Assembly (NCBI GenBank): GCA_038087875.1
Contig: CM075984.1
Coordinates: 41,354,001 to 41,418,000 of the forward strand
DNA from: Malacoraja senta
Lineage: Eukaryota
Reading direction: 5' to 3'
Length of the DNA: 64,000 nucleotides
Of the stretch, positions 24,524-49,992 are shown in pieces (the stretch's first letter is position 1; every line of letters starts with the position of its first letter). Both the position numbers and the translations under genes were made by a program. The notes under the pieces were generated by a model. That model was given only the letters and a program-made list of their open reading frames with translations, had not been told where the DNA came from and ran no database searches.

Positions 24524-24736
24524 TCAACTTGCAGAGTTTCCAAATGTGTTTGTTTCTACTGCCAGGTTGGGGTCTGCATTTTCTGAAGGGTTTTGCCCTT
24601 CATTTGCAATGTTCGTGGCCTGAAAGCCAACATCGTGTCCTGGCTCATTCAGTCCACTAAACTCCAGATTATGGATTTCCATATCCAATGCTGACAAAAT
24701 GTTCTGTGATGCATTTTTCTCAGAGAAGATTCTATC
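24524..24736 (-). CDS. PER2: PER2 last exon 23 (DRIFSEKNASQNILSALDMEIHNLEFSG...NSAS*)
   Basis: ttaatttag acceptor, phase 0 matching exon 22, 70 codons then TGA; positional similarity to human ECVYCENKEKGNI...EEDIPSLGLSEV. Confidence 0.78.
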   Translation of the reverse strand, partial: DRIFSEKNASQNILSALDMEIHNLEFSGLNEPGHDVGFQATNIANEGQNPSENADPNLAVETNTFGNSAS

Positions 24737-25574
24737 CTAAATTAAGAAGAATTACAATCAAATATATACACGACAAATTCCACACCTTCCATAAAAACAA
24801 AATCATTAAGAGTACAAGCAGTGTCATATATTATTTCCATTTTATTCTTACCATTACATTCTAATTTTTATGAGTCATAAGGAACAATCCCAAAATTAGT
24901 TGTCATTTTTTTTAATTATAGCCAACATTAGCCTCAAAAGGAATCACAATAAAACTTGCTGATTCTAAGTCTATATTCAGTTAAAACATGAAAGCCAATT
25001 GTCCATGTTAACATTTGATTTGTGGAAACAAAGAACTGCAGCTGCTGGTTTACCAAGGAATGACAGAACATACTGGAGTTACTCAGTGGGTCAGGCAGCA
25101 CCCCTAGAGAACGTGGATAGGTGACATTTCAGTCTGAAAAAGAGTCCCGATCCGACCCGAAACATCGCTTATCCAGGATGCTGACCGGAGTCTAACCTTA
25201 ATAATTAATTTTCTTGTCTGCCAAAAAGTTGCAGACCCGGCGGCTATTTATTTTACCAATTGTACAATACTGAACTAAATGCTGCAGGAAAGCTGTGAAT
25301 GAAAAGATTCAACAGGCAGACAATTATGTGTAGGAGAGAACTGCAGATGCTGGTTTAAATCTAAGGTAGACACAAAATGCTGGAGTAACTCCGCAGGTCA
25401 GGCAGCATCTCTGGAGAGAAGGAATGGGTGACGTTAAGGGTCAAGACCCTTCTTCAGACAATTATAATGGTTGCTTTGTAAAGTCCAATGCTTATTGGAA
25501 GTTATCACAGCTTTATTTGATCATCTCCCTACTCCCCAATTATATATATGTGCACTAAATGCATTTTCCAATTA

Positions 25575-26775
25575 TTATTATTTTTTTAAAATTTTTATTT
25601 ATTAGAAGTACATTACATTACAACCACATACATTAGTACTCATCATTTATATCTTCTTACAATTAATGTACTCCATTTATTTTTTACAGTAGAAAAGGAA
25701 AAGATTGAAAGAAAGAAGAAAGTGAAGGAAAAAGTGAAAGTGTAGGAAATGTGACAACAAAAAAGGACGAAGACCCTATAAGAGCAAAATTAAAAACAAA
25801 AGAAAAAGAGTTAAGAAATAGACCCTAGGAAAGAAAGAGAGAGAGAGAAAGAGGAAAAAGAGAGAAACAGATATTTTTATGAGCATTACGTAAATGGGAC
25901 ATACCAACTCTTCAACTATCATCCCCCCTTACCTGATAATTCTATAAATGCAGACCACGTCAGGTGGAAGTGATCTGGTTTACCTGCTAGGAGGAGTCTT
26001 ATCTCTTCTAGGTGTAATGTTTCAAACATATTTGAAATCCACATATTTATAGTTGGTATTGGAGCCTTCTTCCAAAATTTTAGAATTAGCTTTTTTCCAA
26101 TTATTAACCCATAGTCCATTAGTTTCTTTTGAAACACATTTAGTTCTGGACCATCTTCCGTTATACCGAAGATAATCCATTCTGCTTTGGGTATCAGTCT
26201 TGTTTTAAATAACTTTGTAAAGATTTCAAAAATTTCATTCCAAAATTTTTGAATTTTTGTACAGAAAACGAATGAGTGTGCTATAGTAGCTTCTTGGGAT
26301 TGACATTTATCACAAATAGATGATACATTTGGGAAAATTTTATGAATTTTAGTTTTTGAATAATATAATCTATGTAAAATTTTAAATTGTATTAAAGTGT
26401 GTCTTACATTAATCGAGCATTTATGCACGTTTAATATGTATTCATTCCAACTTTCCTTTGAAATTTTAATAGCTAACTCTTGTTCCCAGTCTCTTCTGAT
26501 ACCCTCCGTAGGTGGTATTTGTACATTTAAGATAATATTATACAAATATGATATTAAGTTTGCTGATTCCGCTTTTATCTGCATTGCCTCGTCCAATACA
26601 TCTACTGGGTTATTATCTTTTGTATTTTTTTCAAATAGTCGCATATTTGAAAATATTTAAAATATTGATTATTTCCGAGTTTATATTTTATTTGTAATTG
26701 TTGAAATGAAAGTAATTTTCCAGTTTCATACAAGTTTTCCAATTTTTCGAATTTTTATTTTGTTAATAAACAATT
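25575..26775 (-). mobile_element. L1/Tx1-type LINE 3' fragment (ORF2 C-terminus, 3'UTR, A-rich tail) in the last PER2 intron, sense to PER2
   Basis: ORF 25919-26644 has the zf-RVT signature IQFKILHRLYYS..CDKC..ATIAHSFVFC..FW; AATAAA and A-run on the minus strand at about 25581-25603. Confidence 0.85.
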
Positions 26776-27745
26776 ACATTAAATTGAGAGCCCAGTCCAC
26801 TCATGACAAAATTCCTAGTCCACATTTATTATTACCATTTAGTTTTCTTCAGTGATGTGTCACAAGGGGACAGGTCAAATTTGTCTTGGTATAAAAAGGT
26901 GTTTAGTTTTACTTGCATACCTATATGCTATAATAAATTATATAATAAATATAGAATGCTATAATAAATTCTGCACACTTTAAATTTTATGGCATTTCAA
27001 ACAAGAAGTTGGGAATTGATCCCAACTTGCTTTTAATGGGTGATTCACAAAGAGCACTGCAAAGTCTCGGATTCTTAAAATAACAGCTTGAGGATATTTA
27101 AATACAAAACAGATCAGAGTGCTGTCAGTTTTATTGCTCTTGCAGAGCAGGCTTGTTGTATTTTCTTTATGGATGAACCCCCCCCCCCCCCCCCCATCAC
27201 AATGGTAAATGTTGCACGCTGGTTTGGTTCAAATCTATGTTCAGACACTTCAGTTGAAATATTCATACTGTGGGCGATTTTTACTGCTTCATGGGTGTCA
27301 CATAAGCAGACCCAAACACAAATGTCGTGTTTGTAAGGAGGGTCTCAACCCGTAATGTCACCCATTCCTTCTCTCCAGAGATGCTGCCTAACCCGCTGAG
27401 TTACTCCAGCATTTTGTGTCTATCTTCGTATTTGTGAGTGTTCTACAATTTGTGTGGAACAAGACAATTTGTGTGTTTTACAAATGTGTGGGAGTAAATT
27501 AAAATGTTGGTGCAACGCGATTTAGGCAGCATCTAGAACTAATATTTTAGGCTATGAATCATTCATCACAACTTTTAAGAAGAGAGCTATTAGACCTTAA
27601 AGTGCAGAAGGGGAGAGGTGTGAAGCTTAAGGCAGAGAGGAGAGACTACGCACAATCGATCTGTGTTTGTGAAGCATCAAGACCTAAATTCTTGATAAAA
27701 CAACATTGACCTGAAACATAAAGCACAAATTTCTCTCTCCACAAG

Positions 27746-28026
27746 GGGCAGCACAATGGCGCAACGGCAGAACTGCTGCCTTACAGCGCCAGGGACTCAG
27801 GTTCGATCCCGACATCGGGTGCTATCTGTAAGAAGTTTGTAAGTTCTACCTGCGACCGTGTGATTTTTTTTTGCACATTCCAAGGCCGTGCTGGTTTGTA
27901 GGTTAATTGGCTTCTCCAAAATTGTCCCTATGTGTGTAGGATAGATCTAGTGTATGGGTGATCATTGGTCGGCACGGACTCGGTGGGACAAAGGGCCTGT
28001 TTCCACGGTGCATCTCTAAACTAAAC
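27746..28026 (+). mobile_element. HE1-like SINE
   Basis: tRNA head GGTTCGATCCC and CTCTAAACTAAAC tail. Confidence 0.8.
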
Positions 28027-28874
28027 TCTTAAGTTGAGTTTCCACAAATTTCTCTTTTTGCTCAGATTTCCAGCATTCATTCACACTGCACCACTTTTCC
28101 AAAAGTTTGGAAATGTTCAAATATATAAAACATTTTTCATGCTTTATATCACTCAAATAATTAGTTTCTACGATTGATGCATTTTACTTCATTTGGAATT
28201 TATTTGGAAGGAGGTAGGGGATATACATTAAATCCTGCCATTATTATTATGGGAAATTGCCTCAGTTTCAGAGTATGTGCTCCTATAAAAACTGTAGAAC
28301 CACCTGCTTAAGAAGCTTTTCATTTCTGAAATTTAATCCACGTCTGAGTGCAAATGAAGTATTATATTAAAACTTGGATAATATTAAAACTTGGGACAAT
28401 AATATAAATTGAGCGATTAGATCACAACTCAAATTGTCAAACAGAGTTCATACAGTTGAGAAAGCTAAAAAGGGGGTTCTGAAGAAGGGTCTCGACCCAA
28501 AACGTCCCCCTTTCCTTCTCTCCACAGATGCTGCCAGTCCCACGGAGTTACTCCAGCATTTTATGTCTATCTTAAACATAAAATAAGTTTGGAAACAACA
28601 ATACTCAATTGCAAAACATGGCCTTTAATTTAACCCCATTGTTGGCAGTCCAACACAGGGCAGACAAAGGCTGGTTTGTAGCAGAGCTATTAAAAATTCC
28701 CATGGTGCAGTCAATGATGTTCAAGAAATAGGATTTGCAATATATTGTTGAGCCATACAAGCAGCAGCTTTATCAGGTAATATGGAATGCATGTGATAAA
28801 AATGGGTGCAGATTTTATCATGAAAATATAATTCATTTCTCCTGCCAAGTTCAGGAAGTTAAAAATGGACTTAC

Positions 28875-29016
28875 CATGATGCCAATGGTTTTTTGTGCTG
28901 CACCCGTTTTAAAGACCTCAGCAATTTCTTTTCTTTGTTTCTCTGTGAATTTGGGTTGGTTTCTCTGCAACACTTTCAGCTTTACCCTGTCCTCCTTCAA
29001 AACTGTTACAATGTCC
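28875..29016 (-). CDS. PER2: PER2 exon 22, CRY-binding coiled region (RDIVTVLKEDRVKLKVLQRNQPKFTEKQRKEIAEVFKTGAAQKTIGIM)
   Basis: aatcag acceptor, gtaagt donor, 142 nt; VLKEDR..L..LQ..QP.FTE.Q..E Period_C motif. Confidence 0.93.
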
Positions 29017-31171
29017 CTGATTTGTAAGAAAGAAAGGCATGCTGATTATACTGCACTGGGAGATAATAAATATTATAAAAAAAACATCAGCAATACATGT
29101 GCTTGACATATGAATCTCAGCCATCTCTCTACAAAATGATTGGTATCAAGGTAAGGCAAAGTCACTCAGAACTAGAATTTCACTGCACAATCCATGCATG
29201 GTGGTTAATGCATTTTTCATTTTAATGACCGTGTAACCCATTTAAAACAATCAGTTAATGCTCCAGATAAAGTGAAGAATAAACCTGAAGAGAATTGGAA
29301 GCAGACGAACACATTAAATGTTCAAATACTGGAATCACACTTAAGCACATCTTAAATTCAGGATTGTTGCTTAGGGTTAGGAATCAGTTTAAGTCAAAAG
29401 GTTGAGGGTGATGGGTAATTAGAACTAGCGGCAAGCTAAAAGATGGGCACCAGAGCTTTGAGCAGCCCAGTTTAAAAAGAGTCGAGGGAAATGCTGTCCT
29501 GATGACATAGGAAAAGTTAATTTGTATGAGCGTTTCAGTAGCAGATGGACTGCTACTCGAGTAACGTAAAGAGTTGGAAACAGGAAGCCCACTGATGGCA
29601 CAGAGATACAAGGTCTCAGGATCAAATTCCAGATAAAATTGACCTTTTATGCAGCAGTGTTTCTATTTCATGGGCCAAAGACTGGGTTATTAACTTTAAT
29701 GGTTAATGTTGGCTGAAAAGTAGTGCAGAAATCAGACATACAGCTACAGTACATATAATTTATTATGAAATAGATAGTGCAGAATGATTCTCTTGTCTTT
29801 AGATTTCAGAGGGCTATGAATTATTTAATGTTATGCTGGATCTTTGTATTATCTGAAACCCAAAGATCAGATTACAGGTCTTGCAATTAGATTATTACCT
29901 TGTAAATACAATTGGGCATCTTTTACTCTTCGGACAAAATTGGACTCGGAGATTAAATTATTTAATCACTGCCAGGATTAGAAATCCCGTAAGGTCCCCC
30001 GACAGAATAGTGTTACTGACGCAAACCTTGAACCTTAAAATAATTAGTTGATCTCACCCAGGGCAAAGGCTGAAGCACCACAAACATGGAGAGGTCCTCG
30101 AGGGCAATGAAGTAGAACTTTCAAAATAGCTCAGAGATACATCCACTAATTGTCATTTGGTGAACTTGGCCTTGAGTGTGCATGTGGGATGAAAACTAGA
30201 CTCGACTTAGATTGGATGTCCTCCATGGTTGAACAAACTACCAGCCACCTACCAGCTAAACCACATGCCAGTGTGTAATAAGTTAATGTAATAAGAGAAC
30301 TGCTAGCAATCGAGGAGACGTACTACAGAAAGGAAAAGCACCTTCACCACAAGGGGAAAAGTGGAGATTGAATTAAAAATTCTATTGAAGTGCAACTCTG
30401 ATAACCTGCCATCTAATTCCTGGATTCACCAACATCATTGCTCACCAGGCCCAGACTCCCATGCTCTCTTTACTTTCAGATTCCCAATTCCCTTTTAAAA
30501 CTCACAGGGTTCACTGGAAAAATTATGCCACTATGTGACATCCAAAACAAGTGAAGTGTTTTGAGGTAATAATGAGAGTGATATCCAAAAGAAAAATCTC
30601 AATCTAGCACCAAGTTCCAACTGTGCTGTATTAACAAAGTTTTATTGTATTCGAAGCACTGCCCAGAAAACATGAACCAAGGCCATACTATAAATACGTT
30701 CTTTCTGGTCAGTGCAATTCCAATTCTCATACCCTCAAAATGAATACTTTTGAGTATTCTCCCTGTAGGTTTTCCCTGCATTAAACTAAACTTCTTGTTC
30801 TTCTTTCCTTTCTGCAGCCACGACTTTGTTGAACATGGGCCTTGGCGGGTCAGATGGCATCATTGATTGTCTGCCTGCCTATTATTGTATGGGCTTTACT
30901 TTTATTTCTGTGGAGTCAACAGGAATAGAAAGTGAGCTAACCATGTGGGACTAGCCCAGAAGCAAGCGATAACTGAAAACTCTCTCCATACAAATGATAT
31001 AAATATTTCTGCCAGTGGCTACCAATTGCTTCCCACCATGTCCTAGGATACACTTGGTCTGGTCCCGGGGATTTTTCTTCTTTTGTATGTATTAACACCA
31101 CAGGCACCTTCTCTTCTGTAATGCAGATCTCTCGAAGAGATCATTACTAACCTCTCTAGCATCTTTCCACC

Positions 31172-31893
31172 AGGGGCGCCAGGGCGATGGCTGCCCTGCC
31201 GGCAGTCTGTTCGTTTTTCCATTCTTTTTGTTATTTTTTAGTGTTTAAAGTTTGTTTGAATGTTCTTCGGTTTGTTTTATGTGGGGGAGGGGGGAGGGGA
31301 TCGGGTGATTTTTTTTTTCAAGTTCCTACCTTGCCGGAGATGTGGTTAATTTTCAGATCACATTCTCTGGCGTGTTCTGTGGCCTTCCATCGCTGGAGCT
31401 GGAAGCCTCCTCGGACTGTGAGCCCCACCGCAGGGCGCGGACTTAACATCGGAGCTGATCCCTTGCCTGGGATCGCTCCCACCGCAGACTTTACCATCAA
31501 GAGCTTGCAGTCGGGAGAGGCTGGTCGGGAGCTCCAACGTCACAGAAGGTTCGACCAACCCCGACGCGAAGTTCGATCGCCCAGCGCGGGGGAGCTGACA
31601 CCCCCCCCAATGCAGGAGCTGATCGCCTCGACGCAGAGGGCCCGAACGCCGCCGGCTACGGGAGTCAAGATCGTCCCGTCAACGGGGGCTCGAGGCCCAA
31701 GACCGAGGAAGAACTAAGGGAAGGGACTTGTATTTCGCCAATGAGGAATGTGTAGGAGTCACTGTGGTGGATGTTCATGTTAAAATGTGTTTTTGAGTGA
31801 TCTGTTGCTTTTAAGTGTATGACTGACCTGGCCAATGAAATTCCTCGTATGTTGCAAAACATACTTGGCGAATAAAGTGTGATTCTGATTCTA
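31172..31893 (+). mobile_element. Unclassified interspersed repeat with GC-rich body and AATAAA/(TGATTC)n tail; related copy at about 54510-55345
   Basis: Shared 5' GGGGCGCC..TGGCTGC, T-rich tract, TTATGTGG..GGGGG..GGGG and GC-rich body in both copies. Confidence 0.5.
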
Positions 31894-32079
31894 TGTCTTT
31901 CTACATTGTGAAGCCAAACAGCAAATATTCATTGAACACCTCACCCATTTCTTTGGTTCGATGCGTACATGACCTTATTGATCTTTAACCTCTCCCTAGG
32001 TACTCTTTCGCCTTAAGACAGAACAATATGGAGAGCCTTTGAAGTTGGAGTCAACACAATTGGGATTTTGGGCACTTAC

Positions 32080-32179
32080 CTGAATGGTAGTTGATAGGTC
32101 ATCATGGTTCTCGCGTCTATTTTTTCATTGTCAGAGTCGTTGCTTCCAAAATATTTGCTGCTGCTCAAGCAGCTACTAC
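32080..32179 (-). CDS. PER2: PER2 exon 21, shortened (GSSCLSSSKYFGSNDSDNEKIDARTMMTYQLPFR)
   Basis: attag acceptor, gtaagt donor, 100 nt with phases 1 and 2 correct; SKYFGS and MMTYQLP Period motifs. Confidence 0.92.
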
Positions 32180-32504
32180 CTAATCATGACAAACAAAGAA
32201 AAACAAAGGCAAGATAAGCATCTATTGCCTCCCCCAAATTGATCTGGAGAATTAGGCTCTCCACCTTTCACTTTATTTGGCTCTCCACTTGAGCCACCTT
32301 CTGGAACTGTTGCAGTCCTTCTGGTTTGGTTTATTTTGGAGATACAGCATGTTCACAGGCCCTTTGGCCCGAGTCCATGCCAAGCATTGATCACCCGTAC
32401 ATACTAGTTGCACGGTATTCCACTTCCCCATCCACTCCCTACATATTAGCTGCAAGTTTACAAAGGCCAGTTAACGTACAAGCCCACATGTCTTTGGTGA
32501 ATAT

Positions 32505-33228
32505 CAGGGTTTGTACACTTGGAACAGCTTTAAATTCGAGGACTTTAAGGACTTAAGGTCCAAAAATCCAATCTTCAAGGACCAAAATCCAGCAAACATT
32601 GATGGTTTATTGGAGACTTTTATATAAATTGCTTCGTATTGGATGATTTGATTCTGTACCAAATAAAAGTAAGAAAGAAGGTTGGTTGGTCTCCATCTCA
32701 AATTTGATTGAAAATCATGTTTTGCACACCTCTGGTACAAAAAGCACAGCAGAAAAATCAACTTTCAATTCAAAGTTCCTTCGAAGTCATGAATATAGCT
32801 CGAATTATTGCCAAATGCCTATTGGAATTTGGAGTTGAGACCTTGTTTTCTGTTGTGTTACTTGTGTGCTCTGATGTACAGACACTGATTTTCAGGGAAA
32901 TCTGAGAAGGTGATCAGTCAATCCATTAGTCCTGGTTGCAGAGAACGACACTAAACTACATAATAATTACACACAAGATGGTTAACCTATCTATATTCGT
33001 ACTTCAATAGAGCACTGATGGTCCATTTACTCATCTCTTGGTTGTTCAATCTGAAACCATAATGGAAAACTTTGTTTTTCAACGAGTCCCTGCAAACCTG
33101 TACTGTCCCTGCCTGCTTCAAAGTCTCCACTATTTCAATGACTTTCAAGGACCCATGATAAATCCAAGGACTTAAGGCCTTGAAAACAGATTCAAATTCC
33201 AGGACTTTCAAGGACCATACGAGCCTTG
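32505..33228. mobile_element. Degenerate non-autonomous DNA transposon (hAT-like ends) with subterminal AGGACTT(T/C)AAGG repeats
   Basis: CAGGGTTTGTAC at the left end, decayed ATACGAGCCTTG at the right end, repeated subterminal motifs at both ends. Confidence 0.4.
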
Positions 33229-33529
33229 GAAAATGCTTTGCCATCTCCAACCATTGCCAGAGTGTTGCCATGGTCGGAGATGTATTCTATTAAACAGGTT
33301 AACTCCTTCCAGAGCAATAGATGGTCTGATCTAATGTGCTGTTTATTTATTTTTGTCACCCAACCCCAAGCAAAAGCAACCCATCAGTTAACTTACACAA
33401 GCTCTTAAGCAAAGAAAACCATGGGCGACATGGATCTTTTGTTTAAAAAAAAAGAATAGATCCACTGATAATTCAGACAGTTGTTAGTGTTACATTATGG
33501 GTTAGGTTAAGACAAAAGGACAAAGTTAC

Positions 33530-33704
33530 CTGTGTCAGTTCCGGACATTCCACAACCATTGGACGGAGAGCCCGAGGAGCCGGACCTTGTCGATTCCATA
33601 CTCCCCGAGCCGGCAGAGCCGACGTCTGACTGCAATAACAGCTTCAGCATGTCAGTAGAAGTGGAGTGAGAGTCACTGTTCTGGGCTTCAGTAGGGGATT
33701 CATT
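33530..33704 (-). CDS. PER2: PER2 exon 20 (NESPTEAQNSDSHSTSTDMLKLLLQSDVGSAGSGS...)
   Basis: ctaaag acceptor, gtaact donor, 175 nt; QNSD..STS..LLxLLL and SG-rich tract. Confidence 0.92.
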
Positions 33705-34731
33705 CTTTAGAGAGCAAAAAAAAACCATACAATATGTTCACACCAGACAGGCAATATATTATTAATTAAAATGTCAAATTGCTGCATAGTGAATTAAAAG
33801 AATAAAAGAATTGCTACAGACATTTTGGACATGGTATACAGCACATGGCGTTACTGAGTAATGGGGTATCAGTCTTGTGTATCGTCAGGATAATGTAGGC
33901 TAACAATACTGTCTAGGAGACAATACGATGGACCACAAGTTAATGGCAAATGTCTAAACATTGTTGCTTATTCATCTTCTCACCATGAAAAAACAAAGTA
34001 CGGGGAAGGGGGGGGTTGGAGGAAGTGAATTAAAAAGGGTGCAACATATGCAATTTAAAAATAACGCAGGAAATTATAATGGAGAAGTATGGATGACATT
34101 TTTTTTTAAATGGGTCAATTTTAAATCCTTGTCCCATTTAAGAGTTTTTCCAGACACAATGTTTTCTCCCCACTTTATTCTGGGACAAAGAGCTTTAGAG
34201 ACTGGGCAATTGGCATCATGCGCCATTGCAGTCGATTGCTGACAGCCAGGGGATCAGTTGGTGTGAGTGGCATGGAAGTGTCAGGTCTATAGATTAGTGG
34301 TTGAATGTAGAGTCGTTGGAAGATGGCAATGGGGGATGGGTGCTAGAATTGAGGGAGTGAATTGGATCGGGAACAGGTAGGGGAGGGAATGAAAGGGTTA
34401 CAATGAAGGAGTGGGCAAGTTCAAATCTGTTTCCAGAACAGGACCTCACAGATTGGGAGTGGTCCCCTTGGCTAATGCTGAAGACCTCAGGAGTACGATG
34501 AATATCTTCTTCTAAACAAGCGCTCACATCTATGGGTGAGCAGGCGCACATCAAAATCCCCCTAGTAGAAGTGGCAGCCAGGCACAATTCATGCACAAAT
34601 GTATCAGATGCAGGGAGGGCCCAGAAGGAAAGCTCAGAGACTTTATTCTATTTACACTGTCCTCAATTTTCTCGATTTATTTTTCTCAGAAATTTAATCC
34701 AATTATTGTTTATAATTTGTACGCCACTTAC

Positions 34732-35426
34732 AAGATCTGCTTCGTCCTTTGCAATGGTGCCCACATTTGTACCGTTCATGTTGCTTGTCATTACTCTTCG
34801 GTCCGCCATTAATTCATTTCCAGCTACAAGTCCAATTGCTTTCGTAGATCCGGGCCCCACATCCAGAAGGTTCAGCTGCAAAGGTGAAATGGACCTAGAA
34901 TGGAAATTTGGAGGGGAAGTGTGGCCTTGTTGCCCTTGACTCCCTGGTGCAGGCTGGTCACGATACTGCGGTGCAAAGGCTGGCGGAGCCTTGAATAAAT
35001 TCCATGCAGGTAAAAAGTTTGGTTGCGAAGGGAATGGCGGCTTACTTGCAAAAATTGGCTGGTGCGCCGTCTCGGGTCCCGGAGACATGATGTAATTGGG
35101 CAACACAACTGCCACCAGCGGGGATACGAGTGGCGCGGAAAATGGTGGAGTCTGAGGATTGTAATGAAGAGCCTGAGCAGCAAAGTTGGCCAGAGATGGG
35201 TCAGCTGCAAAAGGCATGCCTCCAGGGGTTGGAAACATCGGCAGCTGGTAGGTAGGTATGAGTGCAGTAATTGGTGCGGGCCAAGGGTGGAGTCTATGAT
35301 TGGTTCTTCCGCTTGCCGCGCCATCAGATGATCCTTGCTGCTTGATGCGCTTCGTTTTAGGCTTCCTATTCTTCCCGCTTTTTTTGTGCCCGGGCTCTCC
35401 ACGGTTCCACGCAAATCCTCGAGAGG
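34732..35426 (-). CDS. PER2: PER2 exon 19: NLS (KKSGKNRKPKTKRIK), proline-rich region, SRSISPLQLNLL
   Basis: tttgtag acceptor, gtaagt donor, 695 nt, phase 1 to 0. Confidence 0.93.
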
Positions 35427-35869
35427 CTACAAAGGAAACAAATGGGACTTGTAAGTATTTGCTTCTAACCTTATTCTGGACATTTTTATATTGAAAGGTT
35501 GATGAAAGGAGTGACATAGATATTGGTCCCACAACTCCTGAAATTAACTGTTTAAAATTGAAGCTCAAACAAAGATTCTCCACAATTCAAACTTATTTTA
35601 GCAATCAGAGACAAGACATTGGCAGATCGTCCAAGAAGCAGTTTATAAAAGTTCCATGAAGGCAACTGGAATGACTATAACAGGCAAGGCTACATGAGAA
35701 TTTAACAAAACAAAAACAAAAACCATAGGATAATATGCTAAATTTAGCCCGAAATGAAACATGGTACATTGATCCTCAATTGCCTCTTCTCGTAGATAAT
35801 ATACAGCAACACATTTTGTATGCTTACAAGTAAAATTAATTTAAAAACCCCTTATTTGTAAAATCTTAC

Positions 35870-36136
35870 CACGATCCCTTGAATATTCTTTGTGCCGATA
35901 TTGCAAAGAGGATTTGCAAGTAGCTCCAAATGGTTTTAGTTTACTCAACTCCTTGAACTTGCTCAAAAATATCTGCTCTTCTTTCTGTGTATGAGCAGCT
36001 AGAACTTCTTTGGTGAGACCGAGTTTCTTGAATGCTTCCTTTTCCAGGTTCACAGAAGATGCTGTGGTGACCAGCGTAGCAGATGTCATGTTCTCTGCTG
36101 GATCTGCAATGCCAAGTCCATCCTCCAATAGGATTT
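35870..36136 (-). CDS. PER2: PER2 exon 18 with CK1-binding motif B (FKKLGLTKEVLAAHTQKEEQIFL)
   Basis: gacag acceptor, gtaaga donor, 267 nt. Confidence 0.96.
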
Positions 36137-37209
36137 CTGTCAAGATTTTAAGTTTAAAATTGTATGCGTAAGAGGGTGTTTTTTCTGCATGAAGGCAAGT
36201 GCATCAACTATAATGGCATAATAACTCCCCTAATGAGCAAGTGCTCCAGTTGGTCAGGCATGAGTTTGACCGTGGTAGCATTGCTGGAATTAGCAACCAC
36301 ACATCTGGGCATAGGAGTGGGGAAACAAATACACGTGTTGCGTGTACACACATAAGTAGCATTCAGAAACATTGTGGTATAGCCTGTGGAGCTAATATTG
36401 TTTCTTCAGAAGGGCACCTCAATTGGGAAATACAAATTACTTATGCCTCAAGAACTTACATTTTTTTAACCATAAATCACACTAAATAGCCATCACAGGG
36501 CTAAAATCACAGTAAGTTCTGTTCATTCACCATCTCGGTGCCTGATAATCTACATTGGAACCTGGCTCGCTAATAGTTCAAATTTAAAACTTTAGTTCTT
36601 CCACACAGTCTTTTCCACCTCTGTAGTCTCCTCTGGCATATTTTCCATAGTAATCCATGCTCCTCTAATTTTGGTGCTTCATTGCTCCATGTTGGAAGAC
36701 CATGTGTTCAGCTGCCAAGGCCCTAACCCATGGAACTAAAACTCTCCACCTCCATTCCAGTTTCCTAACTTAACATGTTCACAACATCTAGAAACAAGGA
36801 GCTGCAAATGCTGGTTTATACACAAAAGGACACAAAGTGCTGGAGTAACTCAGCATGTCTGCCTGACCTGCCGAGTTACTCCAGCACTCTGTGTCCTTCA
36901 CAAACTCTACCTTTTAGACAAAGCTTCTGAGCTATGGCCCTACCATCTCTTTATGTGGCCTACAATTAATGACATTTTAATCCTGTGAGATACTGCAAAA
37001 TGATTTTGCTACGTCAAGTGTGCTAAAAAAAAAAGTTGTGGGTGCTGTGAAATTATTAAATATCGCATTTATTGGTCACTAAAAATCAATATTCTTCTCC
37101 TTCCATGCTCAGGTCAGGACATTGAAGCTTCACAGAAATGCTTGCAGTGCGTGTATTAACCAACTTGCACCTCCTCTTGAGAGATCTTTTAGAACGTGAA
37201 TTTCAGTAC

Positions 37210-37368
37210 CTGCATCTGCCTGCGGTTTCTTGTCTCCCACATGAACAATGGTGCTGCTGTAACTTCCTCGACTGGTGACGCTCGCTGCCTTCCTTCGCAA
37301 GGCGCGTGGTGCCAGAAGTGTGCCAACAACTGCTCCAGAAGGCATCTTCTTTGCAGACTTTAATGGAG
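37210..37368 (-). CDS. PER2: PER2 exon 17, FASP region (ALRRKAASVTSRGSYSSTIVHVGDKKPQ)
   Basis: cttgtag acceptor, gtactg donor, 159 nt; SYSSTIVHVGDKKPQ is PER2-like. Confidence 0.95.
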
Positions 37369-37849
37369 CTACAAGGAAAGCAATTCCGCAGGTCAAATAC
37401 TCGCATTTATACTTTATCTCCGATGGATGACTTTGTGAAACATACCGAATTTGGCTTTCGATAAACACTCAGTGGTTACTAAATGACTAAGATATGTTGG
37501 GCAAAAAAATATATATATATATACAAAACTAAATAATGGAAATATTTAATAAATCAGGCAGCATTCTTGGAGATAGAAACAGAGTTAATTTTTCAGATCT
37601 TGATCAGAACTGGAATAATAATTGTTTCTTTCTTCAGAGATGCTGCGTGACATTCTGTGACCTCCAACATTTTGTTTCTAGCATCTGGGTTTGTTTTTAA
37701 AGCAATAAAGATAGGCTAATAAGCCTCAGAAACCTCATGGCACCATACAGATTAAATCTTTGAATCAAGTCAGACGTTCCGTACATTCTGTAGCTTGGTA
37801 GGTAATTTGAAACAAAACTAAACACCTCAATTTCAGACTTGGTAAATAC

Positions 37850-37956
37850 CTTTACAATCATTCACGATATCAACTTTTCGTTTGTCGTCATCCGATGGCG
37901 ATGAAGAACCACACTTCCGTTTTGTAGTCCACGGAATATTGTAGCTATCCAGATAT
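37850..37956 (-). CDS. PER2: PER2 exon 16 (RYLDSYNIPWTTKRKCGSSSPSDDDKRKV...)
   Basis: tttgcag acceptor, gtattt donor, 107 nt; RYLxS..KRKC motif. Confidence 0.9.
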
Positions 37957-38587
37957 CTGCAAAAATACCAAAGTAACAAAAATCAACGAGGTAACAGAAA
38001 AGAGAGAAACAGACTCATTCGACATATTATTTAATCATTTTTCTCTCAACTTTAAAGCAGTATTCTGGTGTATCTAAAAAGGGCACAAGACAAAAGTGTG
38101 TATGTGCGTTTTAAACAGTGATGAAGCAAATATTTTCTGATCTTACAAGTCAAAAGGGTCAATGTGGCTCAATGGTGCCGTCTCGCCCGACTCAGCAGGC
38201 CATCAGGCTAACTTCTGAACATAGTTGATGCTTCAGTGTGGCATTGAAAGTGTGCCACACTGTCGAACGTGACTTGTTTCAGGTAAAGCAATAAACCTTG
38301 GATGTAAAAGATGCCGTGCATTTTTTACACTGAAATAGCAGAGGATATCCAAATCTATATACCTGCCACCTTCACATGAGCAAAAGGATTGATACATTTG
38401 CCGAAAAGTCAACTACCATGATTCAAAGGAGGCTCAATATGTGTATGTTTCAACTTTTACGTCGCATGCTACAATATTTAAGCTGATTAAAACTTGTGTT
38501 TTATTTTAAACTTTCTTGTTTGAGCTCTGGGTACTCAGCCTGCTGGTTGCCATTACTATTGCTGAGCCCAAGATTTCTACTGGAGCT

Positions 38588-38845
38588 GGTTTTAGTTTTA
38601 AGATGCAGCACGGCAACAGGCCCTTCGGGCCACCGAGTCCAAACTGACCAGTGATCACTCATACCCTCGTTCTATCCTGCACACAAGGGGGGGAATTTAC
38701 AGAAGCCAATTAATCTGCAAACTCGCACGTCTTTGGAATGTGGGAGGAAACCGGAGCACCCGGAGAGAACCCATGTCGTGTCAGGCAGAACGTCCAAACT
38801 CCATGCAGACGGTACCCAAGGTCAGGATCGATCCAGGTCACTGGG
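38588..38845 (-). mobile_element. Diverged HE1-like SINE
   Basis: V-domain GTCTTTGGAATGTGGGAGGAAACCGGAGCACCCGGAG on the plus strand. Confidence 0.7.
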
Positions 38846-39042
38846 GCTGGCTGGTGTCAGTTAGCAACCTATGTTAGGAAAGATGAAATGTACTTCACAG
38901 AGATCCAAGTATCTCTGTGGCTGCTTTCTTAAAGGCCATTCATGAGAGTTGTCACTTCACAACTGATGATAAAATCCAGGTCAACAAATAAAGCCTTGTA
39001 GTTTTGGTAAATACATTTGTTCAGGTCCAGAATGCCACTCAC

Positions 39043-39208
39043 CTTATTACACTATCCAGACAATTGATTTGCTGATAGCAATATCCAGCATGTTCCTCAC
39101 ATCTTGGTTCATCCACGAGCATGTTCTTTCCAGCACTACTTGTTCCAGTACCCTTGGATGGGCTGGCTTTAACATCTTTAGTCTGTTTACTTGTCTCTTT
39201 TTGTGTTC
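39043..39208 (-). CDS. PER2: PER2 exon 15 with CK1-binding motif A (YQQINCLDSVIR)
   Basis: tttgcag acceptor, gtgagt donor, 166 nt. Confidence 0.93.
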
Positions 39209-39702
39209 CTGCAAAATATATGCCCTTCTACAATGAGAACAATGCGTAAAATTCTGAAGTAAGGAGAGATCAAGTCTTTTGTTAGTTTTCCCTTAATTTA
39301 AAAAAAAAACAGGTCATATTTATTTAAATTGGCTTTTCAAATACTTCAGTCAAAATGAAGCTAGATGTATTATAGCCAGACTCCCTTCGTCTTATTCTTA
39401 TCTGGTTCTCAAAAATGGTAGGAACTGAATATTGAAAAAGTATACATATTCAAGTAAAATTGTAGTCCCAAAGTATTTAAAGGCAAATAGCAACATGTTT
39501 ACATTGTTCCTTACATTGATGTTTTCTATGTAAATCCAAATGACTACATCAGGTCCATATTCACAGAATAAGAGTGAATGAAACAAGCACAGCTGTAATG
39601 GCAAATGTCATTCTTGGACTCATGGTGCTTTTCACTCAGAATTTGTTTAAATCATTTACGTATATGCCTAGATAATGACTGCAAAATAATTAAGTCTATT
39701 AC

Positions 39703-39805
39703 CAGTTCTGTGTCTGCACTTTGATTCACTCTTTATTTTGTTGAATTCTGTCTGTCCTCGAATTCTTCCTGTGTGGGGATCTTTACCAGCTTTCCAAACC
39801 ACCAT
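39703..39805 (-). CDS. PER2: PER2 exon 14, poorly conserved linker (MVVWKAGKDPHTGRIRGQTEFNKIKSESKCRHRT)
   Basis: ctttctttcag acceptor, gtaata donor, 103 nt; supplies the needed phase 0 to 1 bridge. Confidence 0.75.
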
Positions 39806-40180
39806 CTGAAAGAAAGAGACAAGGGACTAAAGGTTAATGATTTCCTCCCAAAATTAATGACTGCTCAAGAGCAGACTCTGCTTTTGAGTCACAAAAAAAC
39901 TAGATAGTGAATTCAGGATGTACTAGGCCAACTGCTGAATGAACTAATGATGGCAGAAAATTGTTAAAGCAGTATTTTCAACTGCATTCAAAGAGTAAAT
40001 GAAAATATTATTAACTCCAGTGCTCCATTTTCTATATGGGAGCTGACAAACTTGTTTCGGTGGTATCATTAGAGTCTCAAAGCCAAATGTTCTCAAAACC
40101 AAGTGCCACCCTTTAACGTAATCTAAAACAACATTTCCATACATTAGTAAGGGAGAGCTTCACAGTCAAAAGACACCTTC

Positions 40181-40225
40181 CCATGGGCATTTAAATTGAG
40201 CCCATCTCAATTTAAATGCCCATGG
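40181..40225. repeat. Perfect 20-bp inverted repeat with 5-nt loop
   Basis: CCATGGGCATTTAAATTGAG-CCCAT-CTCAATTTAAATGCCCATGG. Confidence 0.95.
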
Positions 40226-41052
40226 AAAGGCAAAACTATGTCTCTTGGCAAACGATTCCTTGCATTTTTCAAAGAATAACACAGGTGCCCAGCCATTTTT
40301 TGGCTCAGTCAACATCACTAAACTAGATTATTTCCATATGTTTCTCACTGCCACTTTTGTGCAAAGCTAACTGCTATCTTCTCCTACAATACACTTTTCC
40401 TGCAATACATCACGTTAAAAATAATTTAATTGATTTCAAAGTAATTCGGAATATCTGGAGATCACCAAAAGGCGCTATACAAATGCAAATCCTTTAGAGA
40501 GTCACTATGACTCACGATCAGACATCTTTGTAATTCTTAAGAGTTTTACAAAGAGCAAATATTTATTTGTCTACAAAGCTATATTCATTTAATTGGCTCT
40601 TTCTACTTGTTTTAAGAGCAACAATTTCAGGCTTATCGATGGACAACATCACCTACATGTTATTGTCTGATTATAAGCATTAATTAATAATCATTAAAGA
40701 TCAATAAAGAAATAAATGTAATTCCTACTGAACAAATACGAAATGAATACAAAGCCCCACGATACTGCAGTTTGGAGAATTGAAATTACAAATTTAAGGA
40801 CCGTATATCCTAACTAAACTAAAATAGAGACCCATAAAATCTGGGATACAGAATAAAAATTACTCTAACGAGATTTATATGCAATAAAAATAAACGCACA
40901 ATTTTTTTTCAACTTGCATTTCTGATGTCTGCGTAGATGCAGCCTCGCATTAAGCTGCGATACCAAACATTTCTAGGAGCATAACCCCTGATTTATGCAT
41001 GATAATCAACATATTTGTTTGCATGAATTAGCTTGTGGAAGAGATGACTTAC

Positions 41053-41184
41053 AGGTTTGTGCAGTTGTCTCTCTTCATTGATGTTGCCATTAGTATCAAT
41101 GGAAGAGGCAACACTGATGATCTGTGCATGGGATCTACTACTGACCAAACTTCCATACCCACTGGAACGATTATTGTAAACAGG
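41053..41184 (-). CDS. PER2: PER2 exon 13 with beta-TrCP phosphodegron SSGYGS (41149-41166)
   Basis: ttttag acceptor, gtaagt donor, 132 nt; PVYNNRSSGYGSLVSSRSH. Confidence 0.94.
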
Positions 41185-41287
41185 CTAAAATAAGAAAGCA
41201 TAACTGTCTTAATAGAATTTAAAGCACTGAATTAGACACAAATTGCATTTAAATCTGAAAACACTCATCAATGTGAATTAGTTTTAC

Positions 41288-41396
41288 CTGCAGCAAGAGC
41301 TGTTGAATCTGCTCAGTGATGGTCTGTATTTCAGGATGAAATGCCTTCAATTCACTACAGCCCGGAGCAGCAAACACATCTTCATTCAAAGGACCT
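41288..41396 (-). CDS. PER2: PER2 exon 12 (GPLNEDVFAA...ITEQIQQLLLQ, NES)
   Basis: atgtag acceptor, gtaaaa donor, 109 nt. Confidence 0.95.
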
Positions 41397-41902
41397 CTAC
41401 ATATCAGAAGTTGAAGGGGAGATACAAGACTGAGTACCCATTTTACATCTGTCATCATTTAATATATGTGATTATGAATATGTACAATTTCAAAGATTAT
41501 GTTGCTATGGCCCATTATTTGACAGGCAAATATTCATAATAATAGTTCCAATTTTGTTTTTTGAATACTAGGGCAGTAACTGCAGTCAGATCGACTGGAT
41601 TCACAAAATAATCACTTCATAATTTCAGTCCCTATCATCACCCTGATTAATTAAAAGTATTTAAAATAATTCATAATTTTAGGATACATTTTTTTCCTCT
41701 ACATTAACACCCTTAGTTCTGCACATCCTTGCTACATCTTTTTTCTTTAAACAATCCCTGTTCACCTCTCAGTTAAAAATGATATTAAAAAGACACTGAA
41801 ATAATACCACAACATCAAATCAGTAACTGCTAGATACAATTCTAATTTGTTGCAAAATGTCTAAATTGATCAATCTTCATGATAATAATCCAAAGCACTT
41901 AC

Positions 41903-42056
41903 CTTCGGACTTTGTGTCTTCCGATAATGAAGGATACTTTTCTGCTCCAGGGATTGACAAAACTGGACCAACTGGTGTCAATTGTGATGTATTCACCACT
42001 TTGTGTGCAGAAACGGACTGGTGAATGTTCAAAAGGTTGCCCAGCATTTTTCAGTA
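41903..42056 (-). CDS. PER2: PER2 exon 11, PAS-B/PAC ([30 protein letters not shown])
   Basis: ctttcag acceptor, gtaagt donor, 154 nt; dimerisation Trp of PWSRK is intact. Confidence 0.97.
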
Positions 42057-42230
42057 CTGAAAGAATAAAAAATAATCAAGTAGCAGTTATCTATGTCTGA
42101 AGAAAGTTCCCAATCTGAAACATCACCCATCCTTTTTCTCTAGAGATGTTACCCGACCCACTGTTATCCATGCTGGAAAAAATGACCATCAGATAATAAT
42201 AATAATTAAATATTGCATCTACAAACTTAC

Positions 42231-42337
42231 TTTTTTTATGAATGCTTAGCATGAGAGGTTGATCATCAGGGTGTAGATGCATCATTACAGGCATTCCTAT
42301 GAGATCCTGAGGCAAATAACCTAATAGAGGAACAGCC
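42231..42337 (-). CDS. PER2: PER2 exon 10, PAS-B ([36 protein letters not shown])
   Basis: tcacag acceptor, gtaagt donor, 107 nt. Confidence 0.97.
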
Positions 42338-42680
42338 CTGTGAAAGAAAATGGAATGATTCAATAATTTGCACAATGCAATTTACAATAAGATATTAAAA
42401 ACGCATTGAGTCAAATACAAGGCTGTTTTAAAAATAAAGTTAAACAAAAAAAAACAGAACTATTACCCAAAACGTACTAACTGAAGCATTTAACTGAATT
42501 TAGGTAAATATCATTTGCCCTGTAGGGGGTGAAACCTAGCTTTTAAAACAATTTTGTTCATGTTTCAAGAATGGTAATTTTATTTGGAATTTAATTTTAC
42601 ACAAGGTTTAATACAATTTAGATTAAAAACAAATTGTTTCTTTCCGCCATTGCTGCGAAAATACTTAGTTCTCCACATAC

Positions 42681-42759
42681 CTCTCTTCAATGTCCTGAAA
42701 CACACAGCTGGGTGAGTGAGTGGTGGTAAACACCCTCTTATCATGGGGAATCTTTGGCG
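42681..42759 (-). CDS. PER2: PER2 exon 9 (APKIPHDKRVFTTTHSPSCVFQDIEE)
   Basis: tatcag acceptor, gtatgt donor, 79 nt. Confidence 0.95.
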
Positions 42760-43487
42760 CTGATAAAACATAAAACAAAATGAAACAATTTTAAAAATGT
42801 GCTGTCTAATCAAATTTTCCCTTTTAATCGGTTAAATTAGCCTTGGATCTTTCCAATGGCATCTATTAAGTTAAAAACTTCAAAGCATAATGCTCAGTCT
42901 GCTAATTCTCACACTCAATGTAGTCAACTACAAACGGTGTGCTATGCTTTGAACCAGGTCATACAGCTTCTTAGAATTTCAATATATTAATAACTATCAA
43001 TTTGGTTTTACATATAAATGCACAAGAACTGCAAATGCTGGTTATTACACAAAAGTACACAAAGTGCTGGAGCAACTCGGCAGGTCAGGTAGCATCTCTG
43101 GAGAACATGGATAGTTGACTTTTCGGGAGAAGGGTCTCAACCCAGGACGTCACCTTTCCATGTTCTCCACAGATGCTGCCTGACCTGCCGAGTTGCTCCA
43201 GTACTTTGTGTACGTTAGCTTCTAACAAATATCGTACTCTGAAGAGTACATGCAGTCAGCCTGGCATTAGGGGGCTGTCCAGGCTGCCTTTAAATTAAAA
43301 ATAAGTTCTAATCACTCATTATCTGACTCGTTCTTCCAGTTTTCCAGCTAGCCAGAAAAAATTGGTTGAATTTGGTTGAAGGATGTTACATCATTTAATA
43401 ACAAATATGATTTTGCAGATTTGGGGTGAGGAGAAAACACAATGAGTGTTTCCTTGCGAAAGATAATTTTGTTGATCATAATCTCAC

Positions 43488-43630
43488 CTTCATATCCCGA
43501 ATGCACCCTTTCAGCAAGCATCAGGCAGCATAGTTGGTCATCGTCATCATCAGATGCCCGAACCTTTGTAAGATAAGGCGTCACATGAAACGGATAGTAA
43601 TGGGTGCTCCGATCTCGCTGTTGGTTTCCA
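43488..43630 (-). CDS. PER2: PER2 exon 8, end of PAS-A (YYPFHVTPYLTKV...LCCLMLAERVHSGYE)
   Basis: tcacag acceptor, gtgaga donor, 143 nt. Confidence 0.96.
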
Positions 43631-45207: not shown

Positions 45208-45259
45208 CTAATCCGACAGAAGAAGGACTTCTCCTGCATACAATCGAAAGGGGATGAAC
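45208..45259 (-). CDS. PER2: PER2 exon 7 (SSPFDCMQEKSFFCRI)
   Basis: ctttcag acceptor, gtgagt donor, 52 nt. Confidence 0.93.
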
Positions 45260-45537
45260 CTGAAAGACAGCAACAGTAACAAGTTAAGCAATTGCACTTA
45301 ATGGAGATAGACAAAATCTAAGTATCTGCTCATACAGTTAAACACCACATTATTAATTAATGGAGTCTTTTGTGAAGACAAAAGTGTGCAAAAAGATCAA
45401 ATATGATGTTGTCATATTTGGTAACAGTTTTATCAAATGGTGTGATAATCTTCCTGGTATATTCTGCACGACTAAACAAGGTTCTGCCAAGTTTAGAAAT
45501 AACACATGGTTAATAATCTCTAAATGAGAGGGAAAAC

Positions 45538-45592
45538 AGAAACCACATCTTCGACTGCTGAGGCGAGAAACCACATCTTCGACTGCTGAGGC
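45538..45592. repeat. Exact 27-bp tandem duplication (period 28)
   Basis: AGAAACCACATCTTCGACTGCTGAGGC at 45538-45564 and 45566-45592. Confidence 0.9.

Positions 45593-49952: not shown

Positions 49953-49954
<2 letters not shown>

Positions 49955-49989
<35 letters not shown>
49955..49989. repeat. (CT)n microsatellite
   Basis: Direct reading. Confidence 0.9.

Positions 49990-49992
<3 letters not shown>

What the first reader, a model, noticed from the sequence alone, without database searches (positions are those of the whole stretch)
24524..32179. PER2 with an eroded CRY-binding domain but an otherwise intact frame: a candidate CRY-independent PER2
Seen in sequence: the 22 coding exons form an open 1239-aa frame keeping PAS-A/B, PWSRK, both CK1-binding motifs, the NLS, and the TSGCS and SSGYGS degrons. 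The last three exons carry three separate in-frame lesions, listed separately below. Established: in mammals the C-terminal ~100 aa of PER2 (QDPIWLL through CxxC) wraps around CRY1/2, blocks FBXL3 and shares a zinc ion with CRY. Inference: lesions concentrated in one interface of a conserved protein suggest lineage-specific loss or remodelling of PER2-CRY binding. This PER2 might then act as a CK1 scaffold or PAS partner, or as a light/temperature input factor, rather than a CRY co-repressor.
Basis: partly seen in the sequence, partly recalled or inferred. Interest (0 to 1): 0.92.

Follow-up and report, generated by a model that had tools for sequence, protein, structure and literature searches.

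The report
Skate PER2 with pared-down CRY-binding domain
This is the intact clock gene PER2 of a skate whose cryptochrome-binding tail has lost its tryptophan anchor and zinc-clasp cysteines but keeps the central clamp that in mouse is required for binding, so it looks like a slimmed-down PER-CRY interface, not a CRY-free PER2.

Summary
The window carries a minus-strand PER2 gene: 22 coding exons, all GT-AG, 1239 aa, no internal stop. All three C-terminal lesions are in the DNA.

They are of different ages:
- The canonical first zinc cysteine (mouse C1210) is absent from all 21 cartilaginous-fish PER2 sequences examined. Skates have no cysteine left in the motif.
- The 57-nt deletion that removes the QDPIWLL/Trp1139 anchor is shared by all five other skate sequences, two of them mRNA assemblies.
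- Only the 9-nt deletion of the (S/F)PW tripeptide and a cluster of six replacements in that exon are private to this window. One of the six changes the Asp1206 equivalent to Gly.

"CRY-independent PER2" is not supported:
- The window keeps QPKF and QRKEI, the equivalents of the two stretches whose joint alanine mutation abolishes CRY1 binding in mouse.
- Alanine mutation of the QDPIWLL region does not abolish binding in mouse.
- This exon is under strong purifying selection in the other skates.
- The PAS region is strongly constrained, so the gene is not decaying as a whole.

I found no PER1 or PER3 from cartilaginous fish, so this may be their only PER.

The scan noted the same reading on another piece of this genome (s1-200016, s1-200051).

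The parts
24524..59057 (-). PER2 coding region: 22 coding exons, 1239 aa
   Evidence: Spliced model with all GT-AG introns and one terminal stop. Collinear with skate mRNA contig L001. Sits inside the PER2 clade, sister to Amblyraja and the Logan skate, with 100% support.
61102..61312 (-). 5'UTR exon (approximate ends)
   Evidence: blastn of the L001 5'UTR, 77% identity.
41903..50316 (-). Exons 3-10 encoding the bHLH-like, PAS-A and PAS-B domains
   Evidence: Pfam PF23170 (E 9e-20), PF21353 (E 5e-29 and 9e-11), PF08447/PF14598 on exon translations. Omega 0.13-0.19 against other skates for exons 3-12.
32080..32179 (-). It holds the junction of a 57-nt in-frame deletion at 32118|32117, which removes the QDPIWLL / Trp1139 anchor.
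   Evidence: 100 nt in the window, Amblyraja and Rhinoraja genomes; 157 nt in Hypanus. Codon alignment. The same deletion is present in mRNA contigs L001 and L002.
28875..29016 (-).
   Evidence: phmmer hits to PER2 CBD chains 4u8h_B, 4ct0_B and 6of7_B, E about 2e-9. Pfam Period_C positions 121-155.
28947..28958 (-). QPKF, equivalent to mouse QPRF (first half of mutB)
   Evidence: Alignment. mutB definition in Nangle 2014 source data.
28923..28937 (-). QRKEI, equivalent to mouse QRREL (second half of mutB)
   Evidence: As above.
28913..28914 (-). Junction of a window-private 9-nt deletion. The ancestral TTT/TCx-CCC-TGG, flanked by a TTT repeat, is gone. This removes (S/F)PW, equivalent to mouse H1193-P1194-W1195.
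   Evidence: Exon is 142 nt against 151 nt in five other batoids. Codon alignment. The Trp is present in 126 of 128 PER1/PER2 sequences surveyed.
28881..28883 (-). GGC (Gly) where other skates, rays and mouse have Asp (mouse Asp1206)
   Evidence: Window-private GAC to GGC. Asp1206 forms a salt bridge with CRY2 Lys503 (PMC4157330) and is the conserved Asp of the WDR5-binding motif IDVTG (PMC13649712).
24524..24736 (-). Last coding exon with stop codon. Codons 24733-24722 read R-I-F-S at the position of the bony-vertebrate C-x-x-C.
   Evidence: Sequence. Alignments. Omega about 0.8 against the ray and above 1 among some skate pairs.

Best explanation
The window holds the intact PER2 ortholog of a skate (Rajiformes; about 91% amino-acid identity to Amblyraja radiata PER2). 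Its CRY-binding domain has been reduced in steps to its central clamp.

Shown:
1. The first zinc cysteine (mouse C1210) is missing in every cartilaginous fish examined. Sharks and chimaera keep Cys at the 1212 position, with or without 1213. Sawfish and manta keep only 1213. Skates, stingrays and the electric ray keep none.
2. A 57-nt in-frame deletion in the skate stem removed the alpha1 Trp anchor (QDPIW1139LL).
3. In this window's lineage, a 9-nt deletion removed the near-invariant (H/F/S)PW, and Asp1206 became Gly. Six of 29 private replacements fall in this one exon, which evolves at about the intronic rate.
4. The elements needed for CRY1 binding in mouse are kept: the Asp1167 equivalent, helix alpha3 LK(L/V)L, QP(R/K)F and QR(R/K)E(L/I).

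Inferred: the protein still clamps the CRY C-terminal helix and competes with FBXL3. It probably does so more weakly. It lacks zinc/redox sensitivity, cannot retune the CRY serine loop and hence CRY affinity for CLOCK:BMAL1, and in this species has lost the WDR5 WBM aspartate.
For: Intact 22-exon ORF. PER2 orthology from the tree and Pfam. PDB hits to the PER2 CBD.

Layering of the lesions: 26-species C-terminal alignment; exon lengths 100 vs 157 nt and 142 vs 151 nt; codon alignment; cysteine survey with 102 of 107 bony-vertebrate PER1/PER2 carrying C1210+C1213 and 0 of 21 chondrichthyan sequences carrying C1210. The skate deletion is seen in two mRNA assemblies.

Constraint: exon 21 omega 0.08-0.26 among other skates and the ray; PAS region 0.13-0.19.

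Window-private cluster: 6 nonsynonymous and 0 synonymous changes in exon 21, out of 29 and 12 gene-wide, p = 6.7e-4. Exon identity to Amblyraja is 0.930, against 0.936 for the flanking intron.

Literature: mutB but not mutA abolishes CRY1 binding (PMC4157330). Asp1167 and Asp1206 form salt bridges. Zinc-ligand knock-in mice keep most PER-CRY binding (PMC11645128). Q1135/D1136 contact the serine loop and shift CRY affinity for CLOCK:BMAL1 2-3 fold (PMC7064333). D1206A abolishes WDR5 binding with a minor effect on CRY1 (PMC13649712).
Against: No binding data exist for any chondrichthyan PER2 or CRY.

In overexpression co-IP, mouse PER1/PER2 with both cysteines changed to Ala lose most CRY binding (PMC11645128), and PER2 CBD lacking CxxC binds CRY2 much less well in vitro (PMC4157330). 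A protein lacking the clasp, the Trp anchor, Asp1206 and the HPW Trp all at once could therefore fall below useful affinity.

The window-private changes rest on one assembly. The exon-level enrichment test was run after the exon had been flagged; Bonferroni correction over 22 exons gives about 0.015. I could not inspect the skate CRY zinc ligands.
Confidence: 0.6

Rival explanations
1. CRY-uncoupled PER2. The combined loss of the Trp anchor, the zinc clasp, Asp1206 and the HPW Trp drops CRY affinity so far that this PER2 acts through its PAS, CK1 or other partners instead of as a CRY co-repressor.
For: Four interface elements are gone at once in this species. Cys-to-Ala or delta-CxxC mutants lose much binding in co-IP and pull-down. 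Exon 21 evolves at about the neutral rate in this lineage, with 6 nonsynonymous and 0 synonymous changes and identity equal to the flanking intron. Pfam Period_C score falls from 279 bits (coelacanth) to 165 (ray) to 97 (skate).
Against: The mutB-equivalent residues, Asp1167 and helix alpha3 are intact. Strong purifying selection acts on the same exon in the other skates, which already lack the anchor and all the cysteines. If PER2 is the only PER in these fishes, complete uncoupling would remove PER-CRY complexes altogether, which is a large claim without any data behind it.
Confidence: 0.17
2. Compensated, co-evolved interface. Chondrichthyan CRYs changed in step, for example altered zinc ligands or new contacts with the elasmobranch-specific conserved tail, so affinity and function are fully retained by different residues.
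For: The C1210 loss is ancient and universal in the clade, yet the CBD core stays conserved. The extreme C-terminus (...FGNSAS) and the D-x-E-I-H-N-L-E block are conserved across elasmobranchs. Sharks keep Cys at 1212/1213, which could still bind metal.
Against: No CRY sequence could be examined here. The last exon as a whole has omega about 0.8 or higher. Skates keep no Cys at all.
Confidence: 0.15
3. Artefact or decay. The lesions come from mis-assembly, a mis-called exon structure or a gene turning into a pseudogene.
For: The 9-nt deletion and the six private replacements are seen only in this assembly.
Against: Open 1239-aa frame with 22 canonical introns. The same exon structure and the 57-nt deletion are found in three skate genomes and two mRNA assemblies. 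Flanking introns have normal identity of 0.91-0.95. The 9-nt loss is in frame and flanked by a TTT microhomology. PAS omega is 0.13-0.19. Excluding exon 21, the private N:S ratio (23:12) matches Rhinoraja (105:55) and the Amblyraja stem (38:20).
Confidence: 0.05

Closest known systems
Mouse/human PER2 CRY-binding domain in complex with CRY1/CRY2 (PDB 4CT0, 4U8H, 6OF7)
   Same: Homologous C-terminal domain. The alpha3 helix (KEDxxKLKxxQ), QP(R/K)F, QR(R/K)E(L/I), MMTYQLP and the Asp1167 equivalent are conserved. phmmer E about 2e-9 for one 47-aa exon.
   Different: No alpha1 anchor (QDPIW1139LL). No C1210/C1213. In this species, no H1193-P1194-W1195 equivalent and Gly instead of Asp1206.
PER2 of other skates (Amblyraja radiata XP_032886980.1, Rhinoraja longicauda XP_078266149.1, two Logan mRNA contigs)
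   Same: Same 22-exon structure. Same 57-nt deletion. No Cys in the zinc motif ([R/K]IF[P/S]). About 85-91% identity.
   Different: They keep EV(S/F)PWF, TIDIM and DIETV...DREKL. The window has a 3-aa deletion and six private replacements in that exon.
Mouse Per1/Per2 zinc-ligand (Cys-to-Ala) knock-ins (Kawabe et al. 2024, PMC11645128)
   Same: PER without the zinc-coordinating cysteines: an engineered analogue of the natural chondrichthyan state.
   Different: The mice keep the Trp anchor, HPW and Asp1206. Phenotype is a shorter period, less robust rhythms and a shorter PER half-life, with PER-CRY binding only partly impaired.
Reindeer PER2 interface substitution (tested in mouse in PMC11645128)
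   Same: A natural lineage-specific change in the PER2-CRY interface.
   Different: A single substitution with a minor effect in mouse. Here whole modules are deleted and the change spans an entire order or class.

Membership tests
Vertebrate PERIOD family | bHLH-like region plus tandem PAS-A and PAS-B domains | tested here: met
   Pfam PF23170 (70.6 bits), PF21353 (101.4 and 42.3 bits) and PF08447/PF14598 on exon translations.
Vertebrate PERIOD family | Period_C (C-terminal CRY-binding region) | tested here: met
   PF12114, 41.4 bits on exon 21 alone, profile positions 121-155 of 171. Only the central part matches. The close skate P0275 scores 97 bits, against 165 for a ray and 279 for coelacanth.
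Vertebrate PERIOD family | CK1-binding blocks, phosphodegron and FASP-type serine cluster | tested here: met
   QINCLDSVIRYL, KKLGLTKEVLAAHTQKEEQ, TSGCS, SSGYGS and SYSSTIVHVGDKK were read in the translation. This is motif presence only; no functional test was done.
PER2 orthology group | Groups with PER2 and not with PER1 or PER3 in a tree | tested here: met
   IQ-TREE: the PER2 clade has 100/99 support. The window is nested as (Rhinoraja,(window,(Logan skate, Amblyraja))) at 100%.
PER2 orthology group | HES6 neighbourhood (the expected synteny is from my own knowledge of tetrapod genomes) | tested here: inconclusive
   A Hairy_orange-domain ORF lies at 2215-2721 (+), E 1e-14. Its orthology to HES6 was not tested.
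Canonical PER2 CRY-binding domain (as in 4U8H/4CT0) | alpha3 helix with Asp1167 and residues 1171-1174, plus QPRF and QRREL (mutB), needed for CRY binding | tested here: met
   KEDRVKLKVLQRNQPKFTEKQRKEI in the window. Definition from PMC4157330.
Canonical PER2 CRY-binding domain (as in 4U8H/4CT0) | N-terminal alpha1 anchor QDPIW1139LL at the CRY secondary pocket / serine loop | tested here: not met
   Deleted (57 nt) in the window and all five other skate sequences. No such motif in any frame between 23 and 36 kb.
Canonical PER2 CRY-binding domain (as in 4U8H/4CT0) | CxxC (C1210, C1213), which supplies two ligands of the CCCH intermolecular zinc finger | tested here: not met
   R-I-F-S in the window. 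0 of 21 chondrichthyan sequences have C1210, against 102 of 107 bony-vertebrate PER1/PER2 with both Cys.
Canonical PER2 CRY-binding domain (as in 4U8H/4CT0) | Asp1206 (salt bridge to CRY2 Lys503; Asp of the WDR5 WBM motif IDVTG) | tested here: not met
   GGC (Gly) at 28883-28881. Other skates and rays have Asp. Birds and Anolis also lack this Asp.
Canonical PER2 CRY-binding domain (as in 4U8H/4CT0) | Actual binding to CRY and competition with FBXL3 | not testable with these tools
   Needs co-IP, ITC or complex modelling with the species' CRYs.

The most novel reading that the evidence does not exclude
Cartilaginous fishes appear to have PER2 as their only PER paralog. In skates, and most extremely in this species, that single PER cannot form the canonical zinc-clasped, Trp-anchored PER-CRY complex. 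Skates would then be the first vertebrates shown to run a clock with a minimal or functionally uncoupled PER-CRY interface.
Probability: 0.15. Interest if true: 0.85.

Novelty: new variant of a known kind. Interest (0 to 1): 0.55.

Why it matters
The PER-CRY zinc finger has been described as strictly conserved across vertebrates (Nangle 2014, PMC4157330). That does not hold for cartilaginous fishes.

This clade offers a graded natural series for the interface:
- sharks and chimaera keep 1-2 Cys;
- rays keep 0-1 Cys;
- skates keep no Cys and no Trp anchor;
- this species has also lost HPW and Asp1206.

The series separates the three modules of the PER2 CBD: the serine-loop tuner, the central clamp and the zinc clasp. 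Mouse mutagenesis has had to separate them artificially. If PER2 is indeed the only PER in these animals, there is no paralog to mask the effects. Binding and period measurements on these natural variants would then directly test how much of the interface a working vertebrate clock needs.

Tried and rejected
- I first aligned CxxC with H-N-L-E further into the last exon. I dropped this once the multi-species alignment placed the motif at R-I-F-S.
- The last exon alone gives no PDB hit.
- I looked for alternative exons that could restore the motifs. No QDPIWL-like peptide exists in any frame. One CxxC-type match at 24770-24784 lies in the intron, is followed by stops, and is one of eight chance matches.
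- I looked for chondrichthyan PER1 and PER3 with three database searches. None appeared among the 120 listed hits of each. The PER1 PAS search is weak evidence, because rank 120 was still at 73% identity. The look-up of encoding contigs had no record for Pristis PER2.
- Literature searches for shark or skate clock genes gave only the G3 2024 gene-count table.
- CRY zinc ligands could not be checked. No CRY sequence was obtainable by reference, and I did not type one from memory.
- I skipped structure prediction, because a single extended peptide without CRY would not be informative.
- N/S within exon 21 against the rest of the gene is not significant on its own (Fisher p = 0.16). The signal is the clustering of replacements, not the ratio.
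Full report
**What is there**

The window carries a vertebrate PER2 gene on the minus strand.

- The model has 22 coding exons from 59057 to 24524, all with AG/GT borders.
- The CDS is 3720 nt and encodes 1239 aa, with one stop at the end.
- A 5'UTR exon lies near 61312-61102.
- Pfam recognises bHLH_PER, PER PAS-A, PAS_3/PAS_11 and Period_C on individual exon translations.
- The central C-terminal exon hits the PER2 chains of the PER2-CRY crystal structures 4U8H, 4CT0 and 6OF7.

**Whose gene it is**

- A whole-library search with the PAS-A exon and a word-indexed search with the closest full-length hit returned PER2 from 17 named cartilaginous-fish species.
- The nearest are Amblyraja radiata, two unnamed Logan mRNA assemblies and Rhinoraja longicauda. 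Identity is about 85-91% and none is identical. The window therefore comes from another skate.
- A maximum-likelihood tree places it inside the PER2 clade as (Rhinoraja,(window,(Logan skate, Amblyraja))) with 100% support.
- A Hairy_orange-domain ORF at 2215-2721 lies beyond the 3' end.

**The three lesions are real but of different ages**

I aligned the C-termini of 26 species. I also rebuilt exact coding sequences from the Amblyraja, Rhinoraja and Hypanus genomic loci and from the two mRNA contigs.

1. Zinc motif.
   - Of 107 bony-vertebrate PER1/PER2 sequences, 102 have both C1210 and C1213.
   - The exceptions are paddlefish (C-L-C-S) and four truncated bird isoforms.
   - None of 21 chondrichthyan sequences has C1210.
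   - Chimaera reads P-F-C-C. Sharks read L-[VA]-C-[CW]. Sawfish and manta read I-F-C. Stingrays read I-F-G and the electric ray I-F-F. Skates read I-F-[P/S].
   - Lamprey, gar, bichir and coelacanth carry a Cys at position 1212. The ancestral motif was therefore probably C-x-C-C, and different lineages kept different cysteines.
2. Trp anchor.
   - The exon is 157 nt in the stingray and 100 nt in all three skate genomes.
   - The 57-nt gap is internal, and both exon ends are retained.
   - It removes the equivalent of mouse residues about 1127-1145, including Q1135, D1136 and W1139.
   - It is present in both mRNA assemblies, so it is expressed as such.
- Batoids as a group also lack about 12 codons just upstream.
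3. (S/F)PW.
   - Only the window has a 142-nt exon instead of 151 nt. The 9 lost bases sit between TTT repeats.
   - The Trp removed is present in 126 of 128 sequences surveyed. Anolis has Leu.

**Selection**

- Pairwise Nei-Gojobori estimates give omega 0.13-0.19 for the PAS to CK1BD-A exons between the window and other skates. The gene is not decaying.
- The CBD core exon has omega 0.08-0.26 among the other skates and the ray. It stayed constrained after the anchor and the cysteines were gone.
- The last exon is close to neutral in all batoids (omega about 0.8 against the ray, above 1 between some skates).
- I counted codons where the window differs from four other skates that agree with one another.
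  - There are 29 replacements and 12 silent changes gene-wide.
  - Six replacements and no silent changes fall in the 47-codon core exon.
  - Binomial p = 6.7e-4. Fisher p = 0.0018 against 4 of 143 in the other lineages.
  - After Bonferroni correction over 22 exons this is about 0.015, and the exon had been flagged beforehand.
- Outside that exon, the window's N:S ratio (23:12) equals that of Rhinoraja (105:55) and of the Amblyraja stem (38:20).
- The exon's nucleotide identity to Amblyraja (0.930) equals that of the flanking intron (0.936). That is what relaxed constraint would give.
- The private changes are E to V twice, M to L (the mouse state), PP to AQ, and D to G at the Asp1206 equivalent. 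Most of these positions vary somewhere among bony vertebrates.

**What the literature says these elements do**

- In mouse PER2, single alanine blocks through the CBD, including VLQDP, IW and LLM, and the N-terminal combination mutA do not disturb CRY1 binding. Only mutB (QPRF plus QRREL) abolishes it. So does charge insertion at residues 1171-1174 of helix alpha3 (PMC4157330).
- Asp1167 and Asp1206 form salt bridges with CRY2 Arg501 and Lys503.
- Removing CxxC weakens binding in pull-down and co-IP. Knock-in mice lacking the PER1/PER2 zinc cysteines keep most PER-CRY association. They show a shorter period, lower robustness and a shorter PER half-life (PMC11645128).
- I1205-D1206-V1207 is also a WDR5-binding motif. 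D1206A abolishes WDR5 binding with little effect on CRY1 (PMC13649712).

**Reading**

- The window keeps every element that mouse mutagenesis shows to be necessary for binding: QPKF, QRKEI, the Asp1167 equivalent and LKVL. It lacks the accessory modules.
[quoted passage not shown] It would still be able to compete with FBXL3. It would probably have lower affinity, no zinc or redox control and no serine-loop tuning. In this species it would also lack the WBM aspartate.
- This is inference; nothing here measures binding. It is most plausible for this species, which has stacked four losses, but the retained and constrained core argues against it.

**Is PER2 the only PER?**

- No chondrichthyan PER1 or PER3 appeared among the 120 listed hits of any of three searches. 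These were a ray PER2 CBD query that did retrieve squamate and teleost PER1, a coelacanth PER1 PAS query and a caecilian PER3 CBD query that retrieved gar, lungfish and teleost PER3.
- The supplementary table of a 2024 survey lists Callorhinchus with Per1/Per2/Per3 = 0/1/0 (PMC11457068).
- This is suggestive, not proof. If it is true, no paralog can cover for the reduced CBD.

**Novelty**

- The proteins of related skates are in public databases under the ordinary name.
- I found no paper that notes the missing zinc ligands in cartilaginous fishes or the skate deletion.
- The structural paper states that the ligands are conserved throughout vertebrates.
- I class the finding as a new variant of a known kind.
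- The scan recorded the same reading on another piece of this genome (s1-200016, s1-200051). I could not inspect that piece.

Noticed in passing
window 56889-56993 (-): An intact, in-frame 105-nt cassette exon candidate with AG/GT borders. It encodes STNTKKRKQKIAEVYTRNKRLPFMSLSFEKKLPTG, which includes a basic KKRK run. It is 76% identical to an exon used in stingray PER2 isoform X1 (P0001 aa 76-109). It is absent from the two skate mRNA contigs and from the NCBI skate models.
   Followed up: partly
window 2215-2721 (+): ORF with a Hairy_orange domain (Pfam E 1e-14), a HES-family exon about 21 kb beyond the PER2 3' end. It may be the HES6 neighbour known next to PER2 in tetrapods. It is in convergent orientation here.
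   Followed up: partly
window 25922-26656 (-): 245-aa open frame inside the last PER2 intron with a weak zf-RVT match (E 1.4e-4). Probably a retroelement fragment.
   Followed up: partly
window 19875-24000: Long + strand open frames with LINE-like basic/coiled text, and a strong positive GC skew (0.26-0.34) just beyond the PER2 3'UTR. Probably a retrotransposon insertion.
   Followed up: no
window 24527-24600 (-) and the C-termini of P0001, P0156-P0170: The extreme C-terminus (N-L-x-x-x-T-x-x-F-G-N-S-A-S, then stop) is conserved in amino acids, and largely in nucleotides, across skates, rays and sharks. It is absent from chimaera and bony vertebrates. It looks like an elasmobranch-specific tail motif of unknown role.
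   Followed up: partly
all skate branches of the PER2 coding alignment: Parsimony N:S ratios of about 2:1 on all three skate branches imply omega near 0.5, higher than the 0.25 seen in skate-ray pairwise comparisons. This may be a bias of the counting method or a mild skate-wide relaxation of PER2.
   Followed up: no
window 61102-61312 (-): The 5'UTR exon is only 77% identical to the other skate's mRNA, against 93-100% for most coding exons.
   Followed up: no
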